Below, in pieces: positions 7,101-38,866 of a stretch of DNA of 64,000 nucleotides. Made by a program: the position numbers and the translations under genes. The DNA lies in the NCBI GenBank assembly GCA_964247055.1, contig OZ176053.1, positions 12,710,001-12,774,000 on the forward strand, written 5' to 3'. The DNA comes from Paragordius varius (lineage: Eukaryota; Animalia; Nematomorpha). Numbering within the stretch: position 1 is the first letter of the stretch; every line of letters begins with the position of its first letter. Under the pieces are notes generated by a model. That model saw only the letters and a list, made by a program, of their open reading frames with translations. It was not told the origin of the DNA and made no database searches.

Positions 7101-10100
7101 CTGATTGTTTTCTGGTAAGTTGTGTCTCAACTGGCACGTTTCTTGAAAGTTCAGGATAGCTTAAACGTTCTGTTATAAATTTTAATGTAATAATAATGCG
7201 TTGATTGCAAATAGTGTAAAATTTTTTACACCATACAAACAAAAGATTTAAAGTTTTTGTCTAAATTTCAAGAAATAACAGAAATCGCGCCACAGAGGGT
7301 AGAGAAAATGATTTATCAGGGGCAAAAATTATTATAAATGACAAATAATTTATAGTTCAGAAAATTGCAATAAAGTCATGAAACCTTGCATGATCATATG
7401 TGGAATAAAATTCAAAGTGAGGTGAAAAATGCCGTTCTTTAAGCCTTTAAATTAATTATTAAACGAATTAATGAGAAAATAAATAATATATAAAGCCCAG
7501 AATACTTGAAACAAACTACTATAAACAGAAAAACCTAAATTCTTCGCATGGACAACATTTAAAGCCAGGCCCTCAACACAAATGGCTTCGCCGGCCACAT
7601 AAAAAATATTGGCACTAATAAATCAATAAATTTAATTAAACTTAGAACTGTATAAAAATATAAAAACAATATAACTGCTAATTTATATCCCTATTTTTTG
7701 CTAGTTGGTTGCCAAAAATTAAAAACTACAATTTTACTAATATTTTAGGAAAAGCATGTTTTTGCGTATGAAATTAATTCCTAGCCTATTCAAAAATTTT
7801 CTATATTTTTCGCGGGCATGACAGGAGGGCCCCCTGTTCACTTGATTTAGAGGGTTAAAAAGGATTCAATAGCGAGTATGGTCAGAAAAAATATAAAAAT
7901 AAGGCCTTTGCTTCCAAATGAACACTAAAATTGAGTATCAAGTAGAATTGCAAGTGAACATAGGATTTAACAAATATTATAGTTTCAAAATGTTGTACTA
8001 TAGATTTTATAAAAATTCAGGTTAAATATGCCATCTCATTATTATGCAAGATAAAATTTCTCACACAAAATATCAAATTCGAATATAAACGGCTATGCAA
8101 CTAAAACGTTGCCTACGCATGCCGAGTATTAATATTTAGATAAGTTTTTTAACTAAATACATTTGATCGCATATACTTTATTTAGAGTTTAAATTATTGG
8201 AAAATATATATTTTTTTTAAAACAAACAATATTTTAAATTAACCTGGAGTTCTTGGTTGGATTTCCGTCTCTATTTCTTTATGGGTTTCACTTTCCGTAA
8301 AAGTGTGAGTTTCTTCCTCTTCCTGAAACGCTCTGGTTGGCATTTTCTTATCAATGACAACAGATTCTCGCAAAATTACTTGACTAGTTTCAGGTTTTAT
8401 GGGTTCAGGTGTGGATGGTTTTCGCCCTATTAATTATAACATTTTTTCATTTTATATATCGAATTGACGACTAATCAATAGTATAAAATATTGAAAAAGT
8501 CCAATTTTTAATTCGTATTTAACCTGGAGGGCTTGGCTGGATCTCAACTTCAATTTCTTTTCGCGTTTCACTTTCTGTAACAGTTTCGGTTTCTTCCAGT
8601 TCTTGAACTGCTGTTTGAGATGACTGTTTTCTGCCATCAGAAACTAGGGATTTTTGCAAATTCAATTGACTAGTTTCAGATTTTATAGCCTCAGATGTAG
8701 ATGTTTTTGGTCCTACATGTAAATTTTTTTTTAGAAAAATGCCCTTCAAATGACCTTGACAAAAAACCATACAAATAGGAAATCCTTAGATGAGCTTGAT
8801 TAAGAGCTCATAAATAAATTCATAAAAAATGATGATATTTAAGTAAAACAAAACATACACACAAATTTTTTAATTATTTTCATTAATCCTTCTGGGAGAC
8901 CGAATGTTATGTATGAATATTATTTAGGAAATATAAATAGATTATTGTATATATGTACCGATTAGGTTTAACCGAATATTTGCCGCGCTTTCTCCATATG
9001 GATTAAGAGCTAAGCATCTGTACTTGCAGAAATCATTAATCGTCGGATTCTGTTGGCGTCATTAAAAAAACAAAATTTGTAAAAATATTGTCAAATAATA
9101 AAATTATTTATATTCTTTATTTACATGTATAGTTAGGATGATTTTATAGAAGTTTCGGGATTCCATACTCATGACCGATTCGTATCGTTGAGAAGTCATG
9201 ACCTGATTTTCACAATACCAAGTTAGGTCGGGCACGGGGTTGGCTTCCACTAGACATTCAATCAAGAGTCTCGTGTTTCCTTCCAGTTTGACGAAAGGTT
9301 TGTTATGGAACCGAGGAGCGATTCCATGAAAAATTCTATAAATTTTAGTTAAATGTCGATAATTAATTACCTTGGAGGCTTGACATCCGTGATCTCTAAA
9401 TTTAGATATATTAGTAAATATATAATTTCGATTTTCGGTTTCATATTCATAAAGCATAATATAATTATAAAGTACCATATTCTAGATGAAACGAATCAGT
9501 AGCAGATCCATTTTTATTCCTTGCAACAATCCTATAATCTCCGGCATCGTTCAAGTTCGCGTCATGAACTTCCAAACTTAAAATGTAATCATTTCCTTGT
9601 AACCGCGATTGTGTTCGATATTTGCCCCCATTTTGAATCAAATGATCTCCGATAAACCTAAAAATCATAGCTTAAAAAAGTTAGGTACCATTGGATGTCT
9701 GGACCAGGTTGGGCCGACAGTCGGCATTCAAAGTAGACGACACTTCCTTCCTCTGATTGTCGAACATGCAGTTTTTCAGTAAAAGTTGGGGAGAAATCAG
9801 ATTTTTGAGGCAAGTAATAATCTTAAAAAAGAAATATATTTTGACTTTAAAGACTATATGAAAAAGAAGACTTTTATTGAAGCGATATTACCATCAAAAG
9901 TTATGGCTATGATTGAGGTACATTGGCCAGCTTGGTTACTAGCACAAATATGATAAGTTCCAGCATTTTCAACCCCTAGGCGGGAAATTGTGAGAGTTGT
10001 AATGTAATAATATTTATCCGTGCATTTAATTTCGATGCTATATTGTCCACCCGTCTAATATAATGTTATATAATGTTTAAAACATTTTTAAACCAATGCA

Positions 10101-10102
10101 TT

Positions 10103-10171
<69 letters not shown>

Positions 10172-10847
10172 CAAGACATACTCTAATTTCTTGGTCGTTA
10201 AATGTCCAAACAATGTTGGGCTTTATTTCACTGCAAATTGTGGATTCAATAACCATTTTATGATCAGTTTGTTTGGCGCTTGTCTTTTTCTTAAAGTAAG
10301 GTGCGGAGTATTCTTCGTTTTGTTGATGAAATGTACTCACATCTTGTATATTATATAGAGGTTAATTAATGAGGGTTATAACCAAGCGTAAAATTATATT
10401 GAATTACCTTTGCTCCTAACGAAATTGAGGTGAATTTTGGATTGCGTGCTTCCGTATGGGTTTGTCGCCGTAATCTCATACGTTCCCGTATCGTAATTAC
10501 TGTTTGGTGACAAAATTATGATTGTCGCCACATAGGTATCACCTTTTTGTCGCTCCAATCGACAAACTAAATTTTGCGTAGCAATTTCACCTCCTAAATT
10601 TTGGTGAAAATCATTCGTTTTCGTTGGTAAAGAGGATCCATCTTTTTTCCATACTACGATGGGTTCAGGATTAGCGATAATCTCAACCTTAAACAAAAAA
10701 CAATCACCAAAATTAATTTCTGTTTTAAAAGCAAAAAACAGAAATAGTCTAATTTATATATACCTTGATGCAAAGACTCCCATCAGGGTTATGCGTTAAA
10801 TGAGGCTTTCTGATAATGTTGGGTGGGCTATCTTCTAAAATGACCAT
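1128..10847 (-). CDS. Twitchin/projectin-like titin-family muscle protein: Ig-Ig-Ig-Ig, low-complexity linker, Ig-Fn3-Fn3-Ig (27-exon model, ~1654 aa if it ends at 1128)
   Basis: Exons: 10764-10847, 10408-10687, 10182-10342, 9892-10054, 9689-9821, 9476-9657, 9371-9395, 9125-9335, 8959-9049, 8524-8712, 8244-8426, 7059-7169, 6881-6987, 6674-6806, 6357-6496, 6183-6300, 6085-6119, 5493-5668, 4214-4951, 3894-4096, 3446-3790, 2575-2680, 2172-2470, 1993-2089, 1708-1963, 1540-1628, 1128-1437. All introns are GT-AG, phases match, total 4965 nt. Ig motifs DTGTYEITATNPYG, DAGDYRIVARNKNG and DFCKYRCLALNPYG; Fn3 motifs YQFRIMAENIYG and YRVCAVNAAG. The first Ig (PPNIIRKPHLTHNPDGSL..ANPEPIVVW) resembles, from memory, the N-terminal Ig of twitchin/projectin. 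Exact orthology was not established. Confidence 0.88.
4155..4184. repeat. (AT)n microsatellite, intronic
   Basis: About 15 uninterrupted AT units inside intron 4097-4213. Confidence 0.95.
4760..4830 (-). repeat. 30-bp coding tandem repeat (~2.3 copies) encoding RPEGIILPTP/RPEGIIWPTP/RPEA
   Basis: Visible in both DNA and translation of exon 4214-4951. Confidence 0.85.
10102..10167. repeat. (TA)n microsatellite, intronic
   Basis: Long TA run with one interruption inside intron 10055-10181. Confidence 0.95.
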
Positions 10848-21600: not shown

Positions 21601-23974
21601 TTCTTTCATATATATATAACAAGGGTAAAATGGTTAAAAAATACACATCTTTACTTACTTTTTATTTAATAAAATTATTTTTTAATGTAAAATTTTTCAA
21701 TAAAACTATTTACTCATAAATGCATCTTATAAAAAAATTAAATCACTGTTTCTAAAATGGGTCACCTATATCTTAGAAATAAACCTAAAATATATGCGAG
21801 ATTTATATCAACCAACACAATCATAAAGAACGTTAACCAAAATATGCCATGTTTTTAAACTTTCGGACAACTGACATTTTAGTAAAAATTAAAATTATAA
21901 AAGCAAAAACACAAACAAACCATACTTTTTAACAATTTGTTTTCTAAAAACAATATATTAACAATTTCGATTTATATGATTGAGTGTACCATTTCACATT
22001 TTTATTCTTTATTTGGTAATTCAAAACGATTATACATATTTGCGGAAATAATGATTAAAAAAACAATATTGTCTTTCTCAAAAAATATTTAACTTAAAAT
22101 TTTTTCTCTCAGCGAAAATTAACATATTTCCTAGTTTTTTTCCAAAAAGAATCATATTTTATAAAAACAAGCTTTATAAACATGATTGTCTTTTTTGAAA
22201 ACAATTTATTCAAGTTTTGTCTAAGTTTTATCTGGTTAATTTAAATTTTTAGTCTAGTTACGCGCATATATGAAATGGCACCTTTTATCTGCAAGACGTA
22301 AGAGATTACATTTCTGGGCACAAGATTTAGACATGAGCGTTGATTGAGCCCCAGTGTCTACAAAAGCTTTCAGAGGGATCCCATTGACACGGATATTTAT
22401 GTATAGCATATGGACCTAATGTTCATAAAAAAAATTATAGAGACAAAATCTAAGTTTTTTTAATGGCAGATAAATTTTTTTACACTTATTTTTTAAGATA
22501 AGCTTTTTATTGCGAAATAAGAAATAGATTTAAAGGGGTAACACTATACATTTTGCTAGGTTATTAGAAAACATTAATGTTTAAAACAGTAGGGTTGCTG
22601 GCTTTATATTAATAATAATTTACGATATGTCTAATATTTACTCTATTTATGACAATTAAATGCCGTTTATGAAAGCAAAAAAAGGGAAACCATTGCAAAA
22701 GATTCGGGCGTGTGTTCAAGAGCTGCCTCCATGGCGTTATCAATGTTTTTCTGGTGAATATAAGAATAAATTTTTTCCTGAATTTCGGGTTTCATGAGAT
22801 CCTCTTCCGAAACAAAGCCTGCTCCCAAATTCGATGAAGATGGTGTGGATTGAGACATATACGGCTACATTCATAATTATATAAATACGGTCAAAATTAA
22901 ATTTAGTATAAAATATAATTATTTAAAATTTGATACGACAATATATATGTTGTTTTTCTAAAAATAAGTTTACAAATGAGATATGATTAAATATTAGGTT
23001 CTTAATGCTAAACCACTTAGACCTTCAAAAAATTGAACTTAGATTGAAAACAATATTTAAGGGATTATTGAGTGGTATATCATGATATGTGATGGTTACA
23101 AACTACACAAGCTTTAAAAAATAGCTTCTTTAAAATTTTGCGCACACAGTAATAACAATCAGAGTTAAAAATAATATTTGACTCTGTTAGATAAATGATT
23201 TATATAAAAATAAACTATAATTTTGCCAGATATAATAAAAGACAATGAATAAAGATCATATGCAATCTAAAATAGCTTTCAAACTTCAACTAAAACCATA
23301 AAATTAAAATCTGAATATATATTATGATAATAAAGAACTTAAAATAAAATCGAGAACGTCTAAATATATTATACAGAACCAAATTTAAAGTATTAATTTG
23401 AGAATATGTGGAAAATCCGTATAAGGCCAAATGTAAAAAAATTATATATTTTTATAAGTAAAATTGTTTAAATAATAAAATTACTTGCATAATTGAGCAA
23501 AACTTTTTGACATCGTTTTTTAAAAATGCATCTACCAGGTCAGGATTTCTTTGGCGTAAAATTTCAAGTTCTTGGGGATTCTTCAAAAAATGGTTTTTAA
23601 GGTTTTGTATTAGTTGGCTATGGACATGTTTATCATTTTTAGATGTAGATTTAGGAAGGACTATATTTGAAAAATCAATTTTAGGTACAAAGTTATTTAC
23701 GGTTGATGGATTTTCATCAGTTTCATTTTTTATAACTATCATTAAGTCCCCATCTTTAACATTCTCCTGTTCTAATGTTTTGGTAGCAGAAGTCAACATA
23801 ATTTTACCATCGTGCATAAGTAAGAATGTAGACTTTGGAACTTCTGTAAATATTAAAAATGTTCTTACTCATAGAAGTTTGGCATAAATTCCAAAAATTA
23901 TCTAAGGTAGTTTCCTTTGTACATTTAACATTAATAAATTCGTCATCTTTAATTAAAGTTACAGTAATTTCCAT
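18651..23974 (-). CDS. DDI1: DNA damage-inducible protein 1 homolog (UBL, retroviral-like aspartic protease, UBA), 7 exons, ~424 aa
   Basis: Exons 23869-23974, 23485-23843, 22691-22864, 22282-22415, 21194-21382, 20355-20542, 18651-18775 (1275 nt, phases match). Hallmarks: N-terminal UBL (..VKDGDLMIV), [31 protein letters not shown], catalytic [38 protein letters not shown]-terminal UBA ([16 protein letters not shown]). Confidence 0.95.
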
Positions 23975-30008: not shown

Positions 30009-33000
30009 TTATTGACAAATAAAATTGGGATCCAAATAGAAATTAAGCCCCTTCAATGCATTATCTAAGGATTCCAAAGTGTCCTGAAAGCCTAAATTAA
30101 GTCAATAAATATTTAATTATATTAATGTGATTGAAACAAAATAGTTGATTGAACATATGGTGTTGTAAGTTATCCGGCAAAATGTTAATTCATTTTGGTT
30201 TATATAGAGAAAGTAAGCTTTGAGATTAACAAAAAACTGATGGCCAAGTTAAAATGGTGGCTAATAATTTAGTGGTCAAATGTTTTTTAAATAAACAATA
30301 TTTGTGATTAAAATAATTTTATATTTATTGGCCACAATATTTTAAAACTCATCTAAAACGCGATTGACAGAATTTTTAAATGTGTACATATATTAATTTG
30401 CAAAACTTACATATTTTTCCATTTCAGTGTATTAATTTTATTTTAACAATAATTGTAAAAATTAAATTTTTTTAATTGAGGCTAATTGATATTCATTACA
30501 GATAATTATATTTTATGAAAACCGATTCCCACTGTATTAAAACGTCAATAAAAAAATAACTCTAAAACATTAGATTTACATTTTAAATGTAACTTAACTA
30601 TTCATTATATAATAATTTAAATATTTAATATTTTTCAAGCTTAATCGCTTCAAAGGCAAAATGAACCTCTTTTTCGTATTCCAATATTTAATATAAATTT
30701 GCATAAAACTATATGTCTCACAAAACGGCAGATGATCAATATAGTTTTTTTTTCAAATTAACGAGTTTAAAAAAAATTGATTAAAACCATTATTACCAGT
30801 TATTGAGACATAACTCCATGATTCATAAAAGGTTTCGACCACAGCTCGACATCTAAGTATTGCTCTTAACCAGCAAACCAAAAGCTTGTAACTATCAGTA
30901 TAAAAAATAAATAAAAAATAACCAAGAGACAATTATACATTTTATAATGCAAAAAATGTTATATTACTTTAAGGCATGGCAAACAAAGGATTTATACAAG
31001 GCATTTTTATTGGTAATCCCATGAGATTGATGCGTTTTCACAATGTTATATATGGTGGCAAACATTTTCTTGAATTATTAAAAAAAATAATTATATAAAT
31101 ATAAATTTTTTTTTAATTTATATCTTTTCATTTCAAAAAAGCGAAATACCGATTTAACCGTAATTTTGGTCGGGGCAAAACTTGCATTCGAATTTTGTTT
31201 GCGATCATTGCCAACCAAAACGGATGAATCCTGTTCAATGATCCGTTTTACGGTTTGTCGATTAAATTCAGGACCGCCCTAACCCAAAATAAAATTTCAT
31301 AAGAATACGATTAAAAAACCATAATAATGTTATTTTGTGTTCTACAGTAAGATTGATTGAATATAAGATATTTCTTCATAACAATTTTACCTTTATACGA
31401 TAATAGAGTAAAATAGCATCCCAGAAATGATACAGTCTGTTTGATGATGATAATGTCGATGAAGGTAGGTCCTTATTGAAATGTTTCTCCAACTTTTTAA
31501 TTTTGTTGATTCTGTCCTTTTCTTTAGCACACATTTTTGCATCCAACATTTTGTGAAAATCGTCATCATTTTCTGGGATAACGACATATCGGTTGGGGGC
31601 AAAATAGGCTTCACTTCTTTTCTTCAGTAATGTTTTGTTATTAGGATGACAGGATTTTGCATTGGGTTTAATTTTGGTTTTATTTACGTTGTCAGTTTGT
31701 ACTAAACATTCAAAATCATCAAAAAGGAGAAAATTATCGTCAATGTGGGGAGATTTGGCTTTTTCCTGACCTCTGATTTCTGTATTCTGTGATTCGTCTT
31801 TGCCATCTGAAAAGCAACTCATATGGGGAATAAAATAAGAAAATTTGGAAGGAATCTTGACTTGGAGCGAATGTTTGTTTTGGGTGTTGGATGTGGGATT
31901 TGCCGTAGAATATTTACCATGATGACCGTTAAAAGAAAAATGATCAACTGATTTCTGCGAGTTTAAATTAGGCAAACAAATGCGTTTAACAAGTTTTATA
32001 TATACCATTTACAGTTCAAATTCACCCTTAAACAATTTAAATTCACCCTTGAACAATTCAAATTCACCCTCGAACAATTCAAATTCACCCTCGAACAATT
32101 CAAATTCACCCTCAAATGAATAACATGTTTTTTAAGATTAAAAATTACCTATATTTTAATATATTTTTAAAAATAAAATTTTGTTTTAAATTAAAATAAT
32201 ACTGAAAAAAATAATTAATTATGCCATAAAGATATATTTTATATTAATAATGAGTTATATTAGTTCGAAAACACATAATATATTTTTAGGGTAATTTTAA
32301 ATTGTTCAAGGGTGAATTTGAACTGTAAATGGTATATTTTAAATCAAGTCAATATATATAATTGTTTAATATATAGTTTTGATAAAAAATAATGAGGTAT
32401 AATTTTATAATCTTACAAATCTGAAACCATGGTGCAAGAGTTTAAGAAGCCTAGGCGCAAAATCCCGTCTTACACAATGCAGAATTGCCAAATCACATGC
32501 TTCATTTTCTTTCGTTTCGCTAGCAAAAAAATCCTAAAATATTTAAATTATTATAATGAATCATTGGAAAATTAAATAAATTGTTCTAATTTAAACAAAT
32601 TACGAATTATCAATCACGGAATATAAAAAGAAATGTATTTAACCCGGTTAAAAATTAATTTTATGCTAGAATGAAAGAAGCATGTGTATAAAAATAAAAT
32701 TATTATGTTAAAAAGGCTTGTTTGAAAAGGAATTACTATCGTTAACATTTTTAATCGTTATTCAGAGACCAAAAAAATAGAAACAATTGTAAAAAAATAA
32801 ATACCTATCTCAATTTACCCATCTTCAAAAGAAAAACAGTGTAACAAATTTAAAATAACTATATACTTTACAAAAGAGAAATCACGCACGATTAAATCGA
32901 GTTATGCCAATATATTTGTTAAAAATCTATTTATATATATCCCTGTATCTGATGGTAGTTAAAAGCACGTATAATTTACATGCTTTAAAGATGTATCAAA

Positions 33001-36000
33001 TTTTATCAACAATAAAATCTTTATTATTTTACTGCAATAAAAAGTCATAATTAATAATTATCTAACTGACATACGACTTAATCTTTGACGGTCGTTTATT
33101 ATATCCGCTCATTTAACAAAATTCCAATCTATAAAAAGCGTTAAAGCATAAACTAAATAATGAATTTACTTGATAACAAGTTTAATTTTAGGCAAAATAT
33201 CCAAAACGCTTTTTAAAACTTTTTTCAGTTCATATAAATAATGGCTAAAATACCGAGAATCGGGGCATTTAATTTTTAATTTATTTCTTATGACATTCAA
33301 AAATTAACGTTATCCTATAATCCCGCAAATCCATCATTCACTCTATCTATAATTTTCAGTTTCCCAAAACGTACAACTCTCTATATAAAAATTACTGTAT
33401 CTGTGTCTATTCCGTGTAAATCATCATTTTCTTCTGTGGAACTACTGCTAATCAAAGATTCATTTCCTTTCGAGTTTTGGTCTAAATTTTGATTTTTGAG
33501 GCTGGAGGCAGAAGATGGCTCCGTTTTATAGAGAGATGATTTCTTTTGATCCGACAATTTTTGAACAGCCATAGTCTGTAAAGCCTTAACATCGCGTTGA
33601 ATAAATTTGTCAATACAAGCCGCAATTTCACAATTCCCTTTGTCTCGATTAAAATCTAAATAAAACGTTGGTTGACTTTCCTTAGTTCCAATCTGTAGTT
33701 TTATGGGCTTCAATGATTCTAAAATAAAATTAATTATACATTTTATATTTCACACGTATACATAAAATGCTTTATATATAAATGCAGCATACATTTGTCA
33801 TATAAAAAAGGTTTGTAACCTGATTCAGCATCCGAAGTGCCTGGCGATGAAAAATACTCGGTTGTGCTTGAATTGGTTTTGGAACCTTTTTGAATTTCAC
33901 CTAAAGGACTGTTTAAGGTTACACTTTCTTTTTGTTTTTGATCATTGCTCACATTTTGGCATTGATTTGAAAATAAATTTTGATTACAATCCTCCTCGGA
34001 AATTTTATTATTATTAATTATGTCCGTCTTTGGTTCAAAATCGGCATGTGCTTGAAAATTGTCACTTTTCCAGTTGTTTTGATGATAGAGTAGCGGATTT
34101 TCCTTCTTGAAGTCAAAAGCATTGATTGTAGTAGAATCTCCAATGTTAGAAAATGAATCTTGGCGATATTTAAAACTCTTCAAGGAATTTTGTTTAAGTG
34201 CCATGTGTTTTTGGCGTTTCCTGCGGGCCAAAAGTACTGAATGATATACACTAACCAGTCTTTCGATTGCAAGTTCGAAATCAGCTCTTACATTCCTAAA
34301 TCAAATCAAATACATGATGGTTATATAATTTTATTTAATGTTATATAAGATATAAAATTGAAACTAACCCCCAGTGTAAATAGGGCGCATGAGCGAAAAT
34401 TTCCGTTTTTCTTTCAGTTGCGAATTTGTGTTTGTTTCGACGCGAAAAATTGTCATCGCAGTTTTTGGTGTTTTTTATAATTATATTACTGGCATTTTTT
34501 CCATTTGTTTGAGATGGAGACAACCCGGTATAATTCGTTTGCTGAATATTTATGATGTTGATGGTTTTTCCATTTTTGTTTTTAGTAGAGTCAGAATCGA
34601 TGTTTGAACCATTAAACCCATCTATTGTAATACAATTATTACCATTGATATTTTTACTACTATTATTATAGTTGTATTTTCCATTACACGTAGTAAAAAG
34701 GTTGTCATAAAGCGCCTGGTTATTATTGGAAAAGAGTAAATTTGTTAAAAGTTTTTCACGTTGGACATCCAAAATGGATAGAAGTGCAATTCCAAACAAC
34801 TGATAAGCTTTTCGAAACATGCCGCTAGAATTTTTGGAATCACAAACATGGGAGTTTACGGCGTTTCTACAGCCAAACTTTCTGGATCCTTGCTTCTTTT
34901 TGCTAAAAGTACCACCACACTTTTATTGATACGATAAAATGTTATATAGTTTATTATAAAAAAAATATTATTACAAGATGTTGAATGTTTGTGTCAGAAA
35001 ATATAAATTTATTCCCCTGGCAAAATTCAAATTAACAATATAATCAAGATATCAAATATATTCACTAAGAGAAACTTATGCAAACCTAGCATAAAATATA
35101 TTTGTAGTATATCTATTATATATAAATAAAGTGACAGATTAAAAAACTAAACTATTCAAGCTATCAATTATATTGGGTATATAATAAAATGTCAATGTAA
35201 CGTCTAATATTAAAATTATAAATGGAAATTAAGGAAAGAGTTCTACATCATCATTTAATATTCCAAGTCAGTGGTGTTCGACCGGAGTCAAGTGCTTTTT
35301 TATAAAACAGCTATGAATATTATCGGTATTATATGGTGCGCGGCCCTTGAGACACGAAAATAATTTTTGGCACTCTTTTAAATCTTTTGGTGAGTAACAC
35401 TGCTCTAAGTTATTAATAATAAAACTGTTGTAATTTTAAATAAAATTTAATAATTCCTAAACTCTTACTTTTGGGTTCTTGCATTGACAATTGATTGCCT
35501 TGTTATGTTTTAGCGGCGATCCTGTATAAACAAATTTTTGTAATAATTAAAAAAATGTGTTTAATCAAATCCTTATTCATTATTATAAAATAAAATGTTT
35601 GTTCGTACCAGATGATTGGAGAAAGTTTACAAACTGTTCTAAATCATAGATTTGAGTTTTCATTTGCCCAATCAAACGCTCTTCAACAATGTGCTGAGAT
35701 GTGTCTTCATAATTCTAAGAACCAAAAAATCAATATTTAAAGATATAAACTAATCTTCTAAATAAAATTATCATAAGTAACAAAATTAATTCATGTAATT
35801 TTCCCTATATCATAATCAATAGCAAAAAAGCGATGTATTTTCACACTATAACCCTATTAAACACAAGAAGCTATTTTTGGAAAACTTTTTTGCACAGTCA
35901 ATATATATATTCAAGAGCCATAAATACTAATTTTTAAAATATAATAACCAAATTAAAAAATATGCATCTCAGGCTTTAAGGCGTATTAATCAATATTAAA

Positions 36001-37573
36001 AAAATGATGGTTAAACAAATCCTTTAAATATTTTGCCGCCAAGAACACATTGTGATAATTCATAATTTAATAAAATAAATTCTATCTCATTTTAACAGCA
36101 TATATCGAATAATTTTAATTAAAAAATCTGCTATTAGTTTGAGATGACTTATTTCATCCAAATTTCGGATTTTTCATTGTAAAGCTCCATGTTTCATTTT
36201 AGTCAGAATACCTTATTTCAAATTTCCGCCTATGGTGATTAATTTTTCAGAAATAAATTCGTAGAAGCGTGTCAAAAATTTTTGTTTCTAATAAATATTA
36301 AAATGTAATATATTAGACAAATATAGTTAAAAACCTGATATTAAACATCATTTGGGATACGTTGCAACATAAGGAGTAAAGAAATAGAAAAAGTTAACAC
36401 CAATTTTATTATTATTGGTAATAGTTTTTGTAGACATCAAGGAAATGTATAGTTAGCTTTTCAAAAAATATTTGTCTATTATTTTTTGTCCGTATAATTT
36501 CGATGGTTAATGACTGTAAAAATTTTATTTTTTCATTTTTTATAACGGATTGGCAATTAAAAATTAATAAATTCTTTAAGATTGTTTTAATACAAAGTTA
36601 AACCATTCTTTGCGACTTTTCTAGAGATTAACCCATTTTATGAAAATTGGATAATTGAAATTTATTGGTTGTTTTAGCGATAATGCATATATTAAAAATT
36701 AAAAAACAGCTCATAGTTTCAAAATAGATGAAAAAAAACGATAATATTTTTGCAATAACTAAATTTTTAAATAATATTCTGAAAATATTTTGTTTAACTT
36801 TATGAATAAAAAATTGCATTCGCCAATCCTGAGAAAAACACAGGTGGACTTACATTAACTGAAAAAAAGTGAACTGTCAGTTACTTTATTTATATACCAT
36901 TAATATTTAATATTCTTCAAATTTATAATAAAATCAATCAATTTTTTCAAGCCTATAAAAAGAAAGTCATTCATTGTATAATAAAATTCAAAATAGTTTG
37001 TTAAAAAATGGAACACAATAACACATGTATGTTTTTGGATAAATTAACGGATATGTATATTGGCACACCTGCCGACTTTGTCCACCCATTAATCCCATTA
37101 TATAAAGCTAAAAAATCACTGTTAATTGTAAAATAGGATAAAAATAATTATATGATGTTGCAAAAAGTAAAATATTAAATTTAAGAGAGAGAAAAACACT
37201 TTTATATTAAGGTAAATTGGGATGCATAGATACAAAAAGAAAAATCAATATTTTATGACGAAAATAAAAATGCTAAAAAACGAGATTTAAATTAATATAA
37301 CTTTAATTATTTTAAAATGGGAATAAATTTTATATAATTACTTTTTCACAAAATTGATCGCTAGGGCATCCTTTGAAAGCAAAACTCTCCAAAGATTTAA
37401 GCATTTTCTAAGATAAAATTTTTTTTTACTTCGCGGTCATCTGTAGATGCTAACATAATTTGTTTTAATCTAAGTTGTATTTGAGCATAATGTGTGGTTA
37501 TGGATAATAAATAATTATTAAGCCGATTACACTCGTCTCCTAATTTTGAATAGTCGGAGTCTTTATTTCCCAT
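30009..37573 (-). CDS. RUNDC1: RUN domain-containing protein 1 homolog, 13-exon model, ~935 aa
   Basis: Exons 37430-37573, 37342-37407, 35609-35714, 35469-35521, 34369-34919, 33820-34295, 33396-33718, 32417-32533, 31391-31954, 31150-31278, 30968-31068, 30797-30891, 30009-30091 (2808 nt). RUNDC1-type blocks appear in order: THYAQIQLRLKQI..LESFAFKGCP; GQMKTQIYDLEQFVNFLQ..GSP..CQCK; HWGNVRA; VRRDFAPRLLKLLHHGF; HFWDAILLYY; KSFVCHALN; LLVCWL..FYESWSY; GFQDTLESL. Small exons may be missing in the 35715-37341 intron. Confidence 0.9.
32003..32334. mobile_element. TA-flanked MITE (Tc1/mariner-like), copy M1, in a RUNDC1 intron
   Basis: 39-bp TIR TACCATTTACAGTTCAAATTCACCCTT(A/G)AACAATTTAAA with 1 mismatch and TA on both sides. 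About 4.5 copies of a 21-bp subterminal repeat at the left end. Second copy at 49238-49490. Confidence 0.85.
35269..35402. mobile_element. Possible old hAT/Charlie-like MITE
   Basis: Ends CAGTGGTGTTCGACC / GGTGAGTAACACTG form an imperfect inverted pair; 8-bp flanks TTCCAAGT / CTCTAAGT match at 6 of 8. Confidence 0.3.
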
Positions 37574-38866
37574 AATATATCAATGACATATGCTTTCGCA
37601 TAATGTGTGAATATGACAAATTCATCAATATAGATGTAATTAAAATAAAAAATTTCAGCTTTGTAACCTTTGAGATATAAATATAGGCTTGAATTTTATC
37701 TAAAAAAAATTTATTGATTATTTTTTAATTTTGTTTTATATTACTACAAATGAATTTTGTTAACTAATATTTAATATACATTTTATTTGCCTAAAACGGT
37801 GGAAAAAGATTATCTAGGATTTCCTCAAAACATTAATAATATTCCCGCTTGATTATCATATTAATCATTGTTATACCTTTTTTGGTCACTCAGTTTTTCT
37901 ACATCCTGTGGAAAACTAGCCTTTTTGAGAAGCGTTTTCGATAAACGTGTTTAGCCATTTAGTTTCCTTAGTATACTTCTTTAACAATTGGGTTCAACTT
38001 CATTTCAGCCCTTCGATTCGTTTTGAAGTAACTAGTGACTACTGTATAAAATAAAATATTTAATAAATATATATTAAATTGAAACATTTGCAAATTGCAC
38101 TTACATATCATTGATGAACCAAAATATAAATATAGATTTATTCCATACTTGTTATAACTACTTTATAGATAAATCTAAAGGTAAAAATTTAGCCAACTAA
38201 TGTGTGCACTAACCACCTAAAAGAATCCATTAAGCCATGTTTTTAGTTTGTATTTACGTTGAATTAACAAATTAAGCTTTAGCATAAAAATATCACGATA
38301 ATTTGCGAAAACGTTGTATAATAACAATAGCATAATAATGGATAAAGATTTCTCAATACTGATTTATTTATAAGTTTGACTTAGCTATTTATTTTTCAGA
38401 ATTAAAGTATAAATTTAAAATGGAACGATTAAGGGTAGCTTTTTAATTCAATTTAAAAACGTCTAGGATAACTAGTTCCAACAATATGAATCGAAGTGTT
38501 AATGGTTTGAGAAAGTTCTGATGGTGATCGAGCCTAAATTGGCCTCTCACTTTAGTAGTCCTTGAACTGCTGTCCTTAAATTTTGGCTTTATAGCACATT
38601 TTTGAAAAACGTGTGGGCTGAATCAGTTTAAAAAAACACAGTGTAACCAAAATAAAAAATGTATATTCTGATAGAAAAATGTATGTTCATGGTGATAGTT
38701 TTGGCCCTTATTTTTTTAGACTTATTTTAATGATTATAAAAGAGAAGATCCTATTTAAATAAAATCGGATAACCAGTGGCATATTCCAAATCAGGGCAAA
38801 ATTTGCGCCATTTTTTAAATAAAATTTGGTGAAAACTAGAGGCTTCATTTTAAAAAATATTATAAG

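What the first reader, a model, noticed from the sequence alone, without database searches (positions are those of the whole stretch)
37408..37429. 22-nt obligatory intron in RUNDC1: ultra-short splicing in an animal genome
Seen: GAA|gtaaaaaaaaattttatcttag|AAA ATG. The acceptor TAG is an in-frame stop directly before the downstream exon, so no indel error can explain it away. Removal gives QIMLASTDDREKMLKSLESFAFKGCP, ungapped against recalled human [26 protein letters not shown]. The same gene has 0.5-1.6 kb introns, so the genome is not generally miniaturised. Established: minimal animal introns usually peak around 45-90 nt, and ~20-25 nt introns are known mainly from reduced genomes. Inference: one spliceosome handles a class too short for normal U1/U2 co-occupancy alongside long introns. 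This is the best candidate for undescribed biology in the window.
Basis: partly seen in the sequence, partly recalled or inferred. Interest (0 to 1): 0.82.

Follow-up and report, generated by a model that had tools for sequence, protein, structure and literature searches.

The report
22-base intron in hairworm RUNDC1
A 22-base GT-AG segment in the RUNDC1 gene of this AT-rich worm genome sits exactly where a related horsehair worm has a 4,578-base intron, so it is very probably a real, extremely shrunken intron, though no RNA data covered the site.

Summary
On the minus strand, 37429..37408 reads GTAAAAAAAAATTTTATCTTAG (22 nt) between two coding pieces in different frames. Taking it out is the only canonical GT-AG way to join them.

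- **Orthologue fit:** exon 1 ends at residue 120 of the Gordionus RUNDC1-like protein and exon 2 starts at residue 121, with no gap. The motif spacing (14 residues) matches 102 of 106 orthologues.
- **Conserved intron position:** Gordionus has a 4,578-nt phase-0 intron at this codon boundary, and an unidentified animal has one of 211 nt. All 27 short genomic ORF fragments from other animals run into a GTN codon at that point.
- **DNA check:** independent contigs confirm the sequence. A second copy or haplotype carries 21 nt. Its listed exon differences are mostly synonymous in the conserved stretches.
- **Missing evidence:** the two probable RNA runs laid hold nothing of this gene, so splicing itself is not shown.
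- a 1-nt error in the AAAA run after the TAG would also restore the frame. The contigs and the spacing exclude that.

Introns under 30 nt are published for only two animal groups (myxobolids, dicyemids). The scan has already noted this class many times elsewhere in this genome. This site adds a homologous 4.6-kb versus 22-nt pair.

The parts
37430..37573 (-). RUNDC1 coding exon 1 (ATG at 37573; 48 codons ending ...STDDRE)
   Evidence: Open frame. A 1.84-billion-protein search gave 29 hits at E<=1e-3, nearly all aligned up to residue 48. BLASTP residues 10-48 match Gordionus P0003 residues 82-120, 62% identity.
37408..37429 (-). 22-nt GT-AG phase-0 intron (GTAAAAAAAAATTTTATCTTAG); 21 nt in a second copy or haplotype
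   Evidence: Sequence. An X1 contig matches exactly, and a second X1 contig lacks 1 nt of the A/T run at 37419. Introns sit at the same codon boundary in Gordionus (4,578 nt) and in L002 (211 nt).
37342..37407 (-). RUNDC1 coding exon 2 (22 codons, KMLKSLESFAFKGCPSDQFCEK), followed by donor GTAATT
   Evidence: BLASTP residues 2-14 match P0003 residues 122-134, 10 of 13 identical. Against Gordionus: 6 identical codons, 4 synonymous, 4 amino-acid changes.
35715..37341 (-). Intron 2, 1,627 nt, with moderately repeated elements
   Evidence: E2 donor and E3 acceptor (..TTCTTAG|AAT) read. Raised contig depth at 36318-36506 and 35184-35372.
35609..35714 (-). RUNDC1 exon 3 (..EERLIGQMKTQIYDLEQFVNFLQ..); the 3' end is approximate
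   Evidence: tblastn to Gordionus P0031 residues 276-301, 62% identity. The second X1 copy differs at 4 synonymous sites and 1 amino-acid site.
30756..30932 (-). Open frame holding a RUN-domain exon of the same gene
   Evidence: Pfam PF02759 RUN, E=1.6e-05, 25.4 bits against a cut-off of 22. tblastn to P0031 residues 637-678, 55% identity.

Best explanation
The 22 bases at 37429..37408 (minus strand) are a genuine U2-type GT-AG spliceosomal intron in phase 0, the first intron of a RUNDC1 orthologue.

It is the remnant of an ancestral intron that many animals keep at this codon boundary. That intron is 4,578 nt in the hairworm Gordionus montsenyensis. In this species it has collapsed to 22 nt (21 nt in a second copy or haplotype).

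Shown here:
- the sequence and its GT-AG ends;
- the ungapped fit to orthologues;
- the conserved intron position;
- the non-3n length difference between the two copies;
- purifying selection on the flanking exons.

Inferred:
- The major spliceosome cuts it out by intron definition. The most likely branch point is the A at -7, in TTTAT.
- An unspliced transcript meets a premature stop in either form: TAA 10 codons on in the 22-nt form, or the acceptor's own TAG in the 21-nt form. Such a transcript would be discarded.
For: - **Only canonical join:** this GT-AG pair is the only one that joins the two conserved pieces.
- **Ungapped fit:** E1 residue 48 aligns to P0003 residue 120 and E2 residue 2 to residue 122.
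- **Spacing:** 102 of 106 RUNDC1 orthologues have 14 residues between the ..KQ[IVM] and LExFA motifs. The window has 9 in E1 plus 5 in E2.
- **Gordionus:** locus L001 has a GTAAAT...TTTAG intron of 4,578 nt at the same codon boundary.
- **Third species:** L002, an unidentified animal, has a 211-nt intron there.
- **Read-through ORFs:** 27 of 27 short genomic ORF calls from other animals lose homology at this point and continue with V, a GTN codon.
- **DNA check:** an X1 contig matches 37260-37540 exactly (depth 340). A second X1 contig (depth 386) lacks 1 nt of the A/T run.
- **Selection between the two copies:** the listed exon differences are mostly synonymous in the conserved stretches, 4 of 5 in E3 and 11 of 13 in codons 21-66 of exon 33749-33384.
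- **Selection against Gordionus:** E2 shows 6 identical codons, 4 synonymous and 4 amino-acid changes.
Against: - There is no RNA evidence. The two probable RNA runs of the same species label that were laid (X4, X6) put nothing on 32160-37800.
- No protein from this species joining E1 and E2 is in the protein collections.
- The gene is unusually divergent. No counterpart of Gordionus residues about 135-275 was found, and the near-universal C-terminal LPVDLA..KDAF motif is absent.
- The 5' splice site GTAAAA is weaker than the consensus, and the intron has almost no room for a branch site plus a pyrimidine tract.
Confidence: 0.88

Rival explanations
1. Dead or dying junction. The ancestral intron was deleted down to 22 nt and can no longer be spliced. 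Exon 1 is then a relic, and the protein, if any is made, starts at the ATG at the beginning of exon 2 (37404..37402).
For: No RNA evidence for splicing. An ATG lies at codon 2 of exon 2. The gene has lost a conserved middle segment and the C-terminal motif.
Against: - Exon 1 keeps the RUNDC1 motif: 24 of 39 residues match Gordionus, 11 of them through synonymous codon changes.
- Exon 1 has an intact ATG-started frame.
- GT and AG are intact, and the second copy keeps the segment with only a 1-nt length change.
- The exons are under purifying selection between the two copies.
Confidence: 0.06
2. Removal at the DNA level. The segment would be an internal eliminated sequence, cut out of somatic DNA as in ciliates, so that somatic cells carry an uninterrupted exon.
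For: Segments of similar size are removed from DNA in ciliates (general knowledge). Adult hairworm tissue is largely gonad (general knowledge), so DNA runs may mostly show the germline form.
Against: - The ends are GT...AG at an ancestral spliceosomal intron position, not TA-bounded.
- Both X1 contigs over the site keep the segment. Their summed depth (726) is like that of the flanks.
- No 22-nt 'left out' row is among those listed. Some rows were not shown.
Confidence: 0.02
3. Sequence error or recoding. Either a 1-nt assembly error in the AAAA run after the TAG makes a continuous exon, or ribosomes shift +1 at the TAA of the upstream frame.
For: Either would formally restore the downstream frame (reading). 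One published hairworm assembly (Gordionus) was built from Nanopore reads, which err in homopolymer runs.
Against: - An independent X1 contig matches exactly, and low-depth X3 shows no difference at the site.
- Either route would add 7 or more residues, where 102 of 106 orthologues keep a fixed spacing.
- The 21-nt form would need a different recoding event from the 22-nt form.
Confidence: 0.02

Closest known systems
Ultra-short introns of myxobolid myxozoans and Dicyema japonicum (Hadjez et al. 2026, PMC13644364)
   Same: These are animal spliceosomal introns under 30 nt (medians 22-27 bp). They sit at conserved intron positions between conserved exons, have splice signals reduced to about GTa...AG, and carry a few A residues upstream of the AG.
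   Different: Those genomes are compact, and most of their introns are tiny. Here the next intron in the same gene is 1,627 nt, and the homologous intron in a related hairworm is 4,578 nt. Nematomorpha is not mentioned in that paper.
Tiny introns of ciliates (Paramecium about 25 nt; Stentor 15-16 nt)
   Same: The length class is the same. So is the feature that a retained intron gives a premature stop, through non-3n length or an in-frame stop (PMC5014332 in the listing; the stop-codon rule is from general knowledge).
   Different: These are unicellular eukaryotes in which essentially all introns are tiny. There is no coexistence with kb-sized introns.
Human 'ultra-short' introns (43-65 nt; SPF45/RBM17-dependent short introns)
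   Same: These are short introns handled by the major spliceosome alongside very long ones (PMC4463651 and 10.1101/784868, abstracts).
   Different: They are two to three times longer than 22 nt. Whether the hairworm introns depend on an RBM17-like factor is untested.

Membership tests
U2-type GT-AG spliceosomal intron | GT at the 5' end and AG at the 3' end, and removal restores one continuous reading frame | tested here: met
   GTAAAA...CTTAG. The phase-0 junction GAA|AAA joins the two open frames.
U2-type GT-AG spliceosomal intron | Lies at the position of an intron in orthologous genes | tested here: met
   Same codon boundary as the 4,578-nt intron in Gordionus L001 and the 211-nt intron in L002. 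27 of 27 read-through ORFs continue with a GTN codon there.
U2-type GT-AG spliceosomal intron | The spliced product matches orthologous proteins without a gap | tested here: met
   E1 residue 48 aligns to P0003 residue 120 and E2 residue 2 to residue 122. The 14-residue spacing matches 102 of 106 orthologues.
U2-type GT-AG spliceosomal intron | Evolves as non-coding sequence between constrained exons | tested here: met
   1-nt length difference between the two X1 contigs. Listed exon differences are mostly synonymous in the conserved stretches.
U2-type GT-AG spliceosomal intron | Excised from RNA (spliced reads, lariat) | not testable with these tools
U2-type GT-AG spliceosomal intron | Recognisable branch point and pyrimidine tract | tested here: inconclusive
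   TTTAT with an A at -7, followed by CTT, fits yUnAy only loosely. A single intron cannot give a consensus.
Genome-wide ultra-short intron class (as in Myxobolidae and Dicyemida) | Intron under 30 nt | tested here: met
   22 nt, and 21 nt in the second copy.
Genome-wide ultra-short intron class (as in Myxobolidae and Dicyemida) | Many such introns across the genome | tested here: inconclusive
   One more candidate lies in this window (DDI1, 25 nt). An ORF-only census cannot separate GT..AG from control dinucleotide pairs (224 against 206-343). Earlier notes of the scan report many, but I did not check them.
Genome-wide ultra-short intron class (as in Myxobolidae and Dicyemida) | Compact genome in which short introns dominate | tested here: not met
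   Intron 2 of the same gene is 1,627 nt. The window holds repeats at up to thousands of times single-copy depth. The related Gordionus genome is 288 Mb and 64% repeats.
RUNDC1 (PF26030 + PF02759) | N-terminal RUNDC1 motif and C-terminal RUN domain in one gene, in order | tested here: met
   E1 hits RUNDC1 proteins. RUN domain in 30756-30932. The exons are collinear with Gordionus P0031. The middle coiled coil and the C-terminal KDAF motif were not found.
Programmed +1 ribosomal frameshift | One fixed shift site that gives the conserved product | tested here: not met
   The product would be at least 7 residues longer than the fixed orthologue spacing. The 21-nt form changes the incoming frame.

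The most novel reading that the evidence does not exclude
Horsehair worms would be a third animal lineage with introns of 20-30 nt, and the first in which they coexist with kb-sized introns in a large, repeat-rich genome.

Ancestral long introns, mostly near the 5' ends of genes, would have collapsed to the physical minimum (here 4.6 kb against 22 nt). One spliceosome would process both extremes.

Standard gene finders and BUSCO-type tools would miss these introns. [quoted passage not shown]
Probability: 0.45. Interest if true: 0.8.

Novelty: new variant of a known kind. Interest (0 to 1): 0.62.

Why it matters
If the intron is spliced, it shows that an animal spliceosome which handles multi-kb introns can also remove one too short to hold U1 and U2 particles side by side. 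That bears on the minimal requirements for splice-site pairing.

The homologous 4,578-nt and 22-nt pair gives a clean case of intron collapse between related worms.

There is also a practical side. My understanding is that gene predictors commonly apply minimum intron lengths well above 22 nt. They would then break such genes, and this one would lose its conserved N-terminus. Gene counts, BUSCO scores (71.6% for Gordionus) and claims of gene loss in hairworms may therefore need re-examination.

Tried and rejected
- **Read-through ORF:** a word search with the 58-residue ORF found no candidate.
- **DDI1:** a word search with DDI1 exon 2, looking for a transcript-derived protein that spans the 25-nt candidate, found nothing.
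- **Pfam on single exons:** only the RUN piece scored.
- **Census:** a window-wide count of 18-40-nt GT..AG segments that join open frames gave 224 candidates, against 206-343 for control dinucleotide pairs. It has no discriminating power.
- **A second tiny intron in the gene:** a 35-nt candidate at 34825-34859 was rejected, because the Gordionus protein aligns straight through it in one frame.
- **Contig look-ups:** P0003 is not on record, and P0010 came back without DNA.
- **Joined model:** the joined E1+E2 model was not searched. The exons were searched one by one.
- **Species:** I did not identify the species. It is not G. montsenyensis (62% identity in E1).

Full report
**Observation.** The gene lies on the minus strand.
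- Positions 37573..37430 form an ATG-started open frame of 48 codons ending ...QIMLASTDDRE.
- Positions 37429..37408 read GTAAAAAAAAATTTTATCTTAG, 22 nt.
- Positions 37407..37342 read KMLKSLESFAFKGCPSDQFCEK and are followed by GTAATT.
- Read through, the upstream frame stops at TAA 10 codons after the GT. The TAG of the acceptor is a stop in the downstream frame.
- Exon 1 holds two other GT dinucleotides, in phases 1 and 2. Neither can pair with this acceptor and keep the downstream frame. The 22-nt GT-AG pair is therefore the only canonical join.

That is not strictly true. Losing one A from the AAAA run after the TAG would give a continuous frame with 7 extra residues. Other evidence, below, excludes this.

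**What the gene is.**
- A Pfam scan of single exons finds a RUN domain in 30756-30932 (E = 1.6e-05, above the curated cut-off).
- An exhaustive HMMER search with exon 1 alone gave 29 proteins at E <= 1e-3. Nearly all are aligned right up to residue 48, the last residue of the exon.
- The best-identity full-length hit, P0003, belongs to a cluster that NCBI names 'RUN domain-containing protein 1-like [Gordionus sp. m RMFG-2023]'. The other named hits are RUNDC1 of scallops and a sponge.
- A word search with the Gordionus protein gave 193 further RUNDC1 orthologues. Nearly all those listed carry both PF26030 and PF02759; a few carry PF26030 alone.
- tblastn of the Gordionus protein on the window shows collinear exons down to about 30030.

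**The junction.**
- Exon by exon, BLASTP puts exon 1 residues 10-48 on P0003 residues 82-120, and exon 2 residues 2-14 on residues 122-134. The join has no gap.
- Among the proteins fetched, 102 of 106 that carry both motifs have 14 residues between ..KQ[IVM] and [LMIV]ExFA. The nematode proteins, which have Q in place of E in the second motif, show the same 9 + 5 layout on inspection. The window has 9 in exon 1 and 5 in exon 2.
- The joined model itself was not searched.

**The intron position is ancestral.**
- The Gordionus locus is L001 (GCA_954871325.2, OX940784.2). It has the donor GAT|GTAAAT right after the codon aligned to E48, and the acceptor TTTAG|GGA right before the codon aligned to K1 of exon 2. 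Between them lie 4,578 nt.
- A genomic contig of an unidentified animal (L002, Logan SRR10898805) has a 211-nt GT...AG intron at the same boundary.
- 27 short proteins among the hits are ORF calls on genomic contigs. All 27 lose homology exactly there and continue with V, a GTN codon, as expected when an ORF runs into a donor site. They belong to at least 21 separate clusters at 50% identity.
- The window's own read-through does the same (REV...).

**The DNA is right, and the segment behaves as non-coding.**
- One contig of run X1 covers 37260-37540 with no difference (depth 340).
- A second X1 contig (depth 386) differs by one base left out at 37419. That makes the A/T run 8 instead of 9 and the segment 21 nt.
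- Low-depth run X3, from a different study and organism label, covers the site and shows no deletion. X1 may be the sample the assembly came from, so it is a check on base calling, not an independent individual.
- The second X1 copy, whether haplotype or recent paralogue, differs from the window elsewhere in the gene. Its listed differences are mostly synonymous in the conserved stretches: 4 synonymous to 1 replacement in exon 3, and 11 synonymous of 13 in codons 21-66 of exon 33749-33384. In the low-complexity tail of that exon (codons 70-95) replacements outnumber synonymous changes. The listed indels there sum to 3. The lists were truncated by the tool.
- Against Gordionus, exon 2 has 6 identical codons, 4 synonymous and 4 replacement changes. 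Exon 1 has 13, 11 and 15.
- Both flanking exons are therefore under purifying selection in their own frames, while the 22 nt between them tolerate a frame-breaking length change.
- Retention gives a premature stop in both forms.

**What is not shown.** The sequencing-run search listed no run on record as RNA that holds the stretch. The two probable RNA runs of the same species label that I laid put nothing on it. No protein of this species joining the two exons is in the collections. Excision from RNA, the branch point and the responsible machinery are inferred.

**Organism.**
- The window is about 27-28% G+C, like L001 (27.5%) and the published G. montsenyensis assembly (26.93%).
- Gordionus gives the best identity for exon 1 (60-62%, against 46-59% for the other hits).
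- The two share lineage-specific stretches, for example LHCVR(R/K)DFAPRLL(K/E)LLHHG.
- At 62% identity the window is a different species from G. montsenyensis, very probably another nematomorph. I did not identify it.

**Literature.**
- A 2026 paper states that animal introns under 30 bp are known only from Myxobolidae and Dicyema, among 51 genomes surveyed (PMC13644364). It does not mention hairworms.
- No paper in the library holds both 'Nematomorpha' and 'short introns'.
- The Gordionus genome preprint never uses the word intron.
- Cunha et al. 2023 is not in the library, so I could not check it.

**Earlier notes of this scan.** Many 20-32-nt introns have been reported in other windows of the same genome. 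One note claims RNA support at another gene. I used these as leads only.

**Rivals.**
- A dead junction, with translation starting at the ATG of exon 2, is hard to square with the conservation of exon 1 and the intact GT and AG.
- Removal at the DNA level is unlikely. The segment sits at a spliceosomal intron position, and both DNA contigs keep it.
- Assembly error and frameshifting are excluded by the contigs, the fixed spacing and the 21-nt form.

**Verdict.** This is very probably a real 22-nt intron (0.88), one locus of a class the scan has already met, here with unusually direct comparative proof. Because such introns are published for two other animal groups, I rate it a new variant of a known kind.

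Noticed in passing
window 23844-23868 (minus): A 25-nt GT-AG candidate first intron in a DDI1/DDI2-like gene (GTAAGAACATTTTTAATATTTACAG, phase 1). It would join MEITVTL...CQTSM to (K)[15 protein letters not shown]. The downstream exon hits the Pfam Ddi2 HDD domain (E = 1.6e-11). Like the RUNDC1 case, it is the first intron of its gene.
   Followed up: partly
window 32011-32113 and 32160-32348: A 21-nt tandem repeat (unit ACAATTCAAATTCACCCTCGA, 4.9 copies) lies inside the RUNDC1 gene. Next to it is a stretch whose contig depth in X1 is about 5 million against about 600 for single-copy DNA. The loose ends there match the repeat unit. This looks like a very abundant satellite.
   Followed up: no
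window 35715-37341 and 30012-30107 (minus): The window's RUNDC1 shows no counterpart of Gordionus residues about 135-275 (the middle coiled coil, ..QLKxQLxxLExYAYE..). It also ends FYLDPNFICQ* instead of the near-universal LPVDLA..KDAF C-terminus. The gene is either unusually divergent or has undetected exons.
   Followed up: partly
window 32160-37800 (run X1): Across the gene, X1 holds a second set of contigs at similar depth, 4-11% different in exons. This is either a very divergent second haplotype or a recent duplicate of the locus.
   Followed up: partly
L001 2145-2186 (approximate): Gordionus RUNDC1-like has an annotated 42-nt GT-AG intron inside its first coding exon (after ...PPMNE), with in-frame stops. 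So short introns occur in that hairworm too.
   Followed up: no
window 9336-10382 (minus): The Ig/FN3 (titin-like) gene at the left of the window shows several GT...AG segments of 31-40 nt between long open frames (9336-9370, 9658-9688, 9854-9891, 10055-10093, 10343-10382). They look like ordinary short introns.
   Followed up: no
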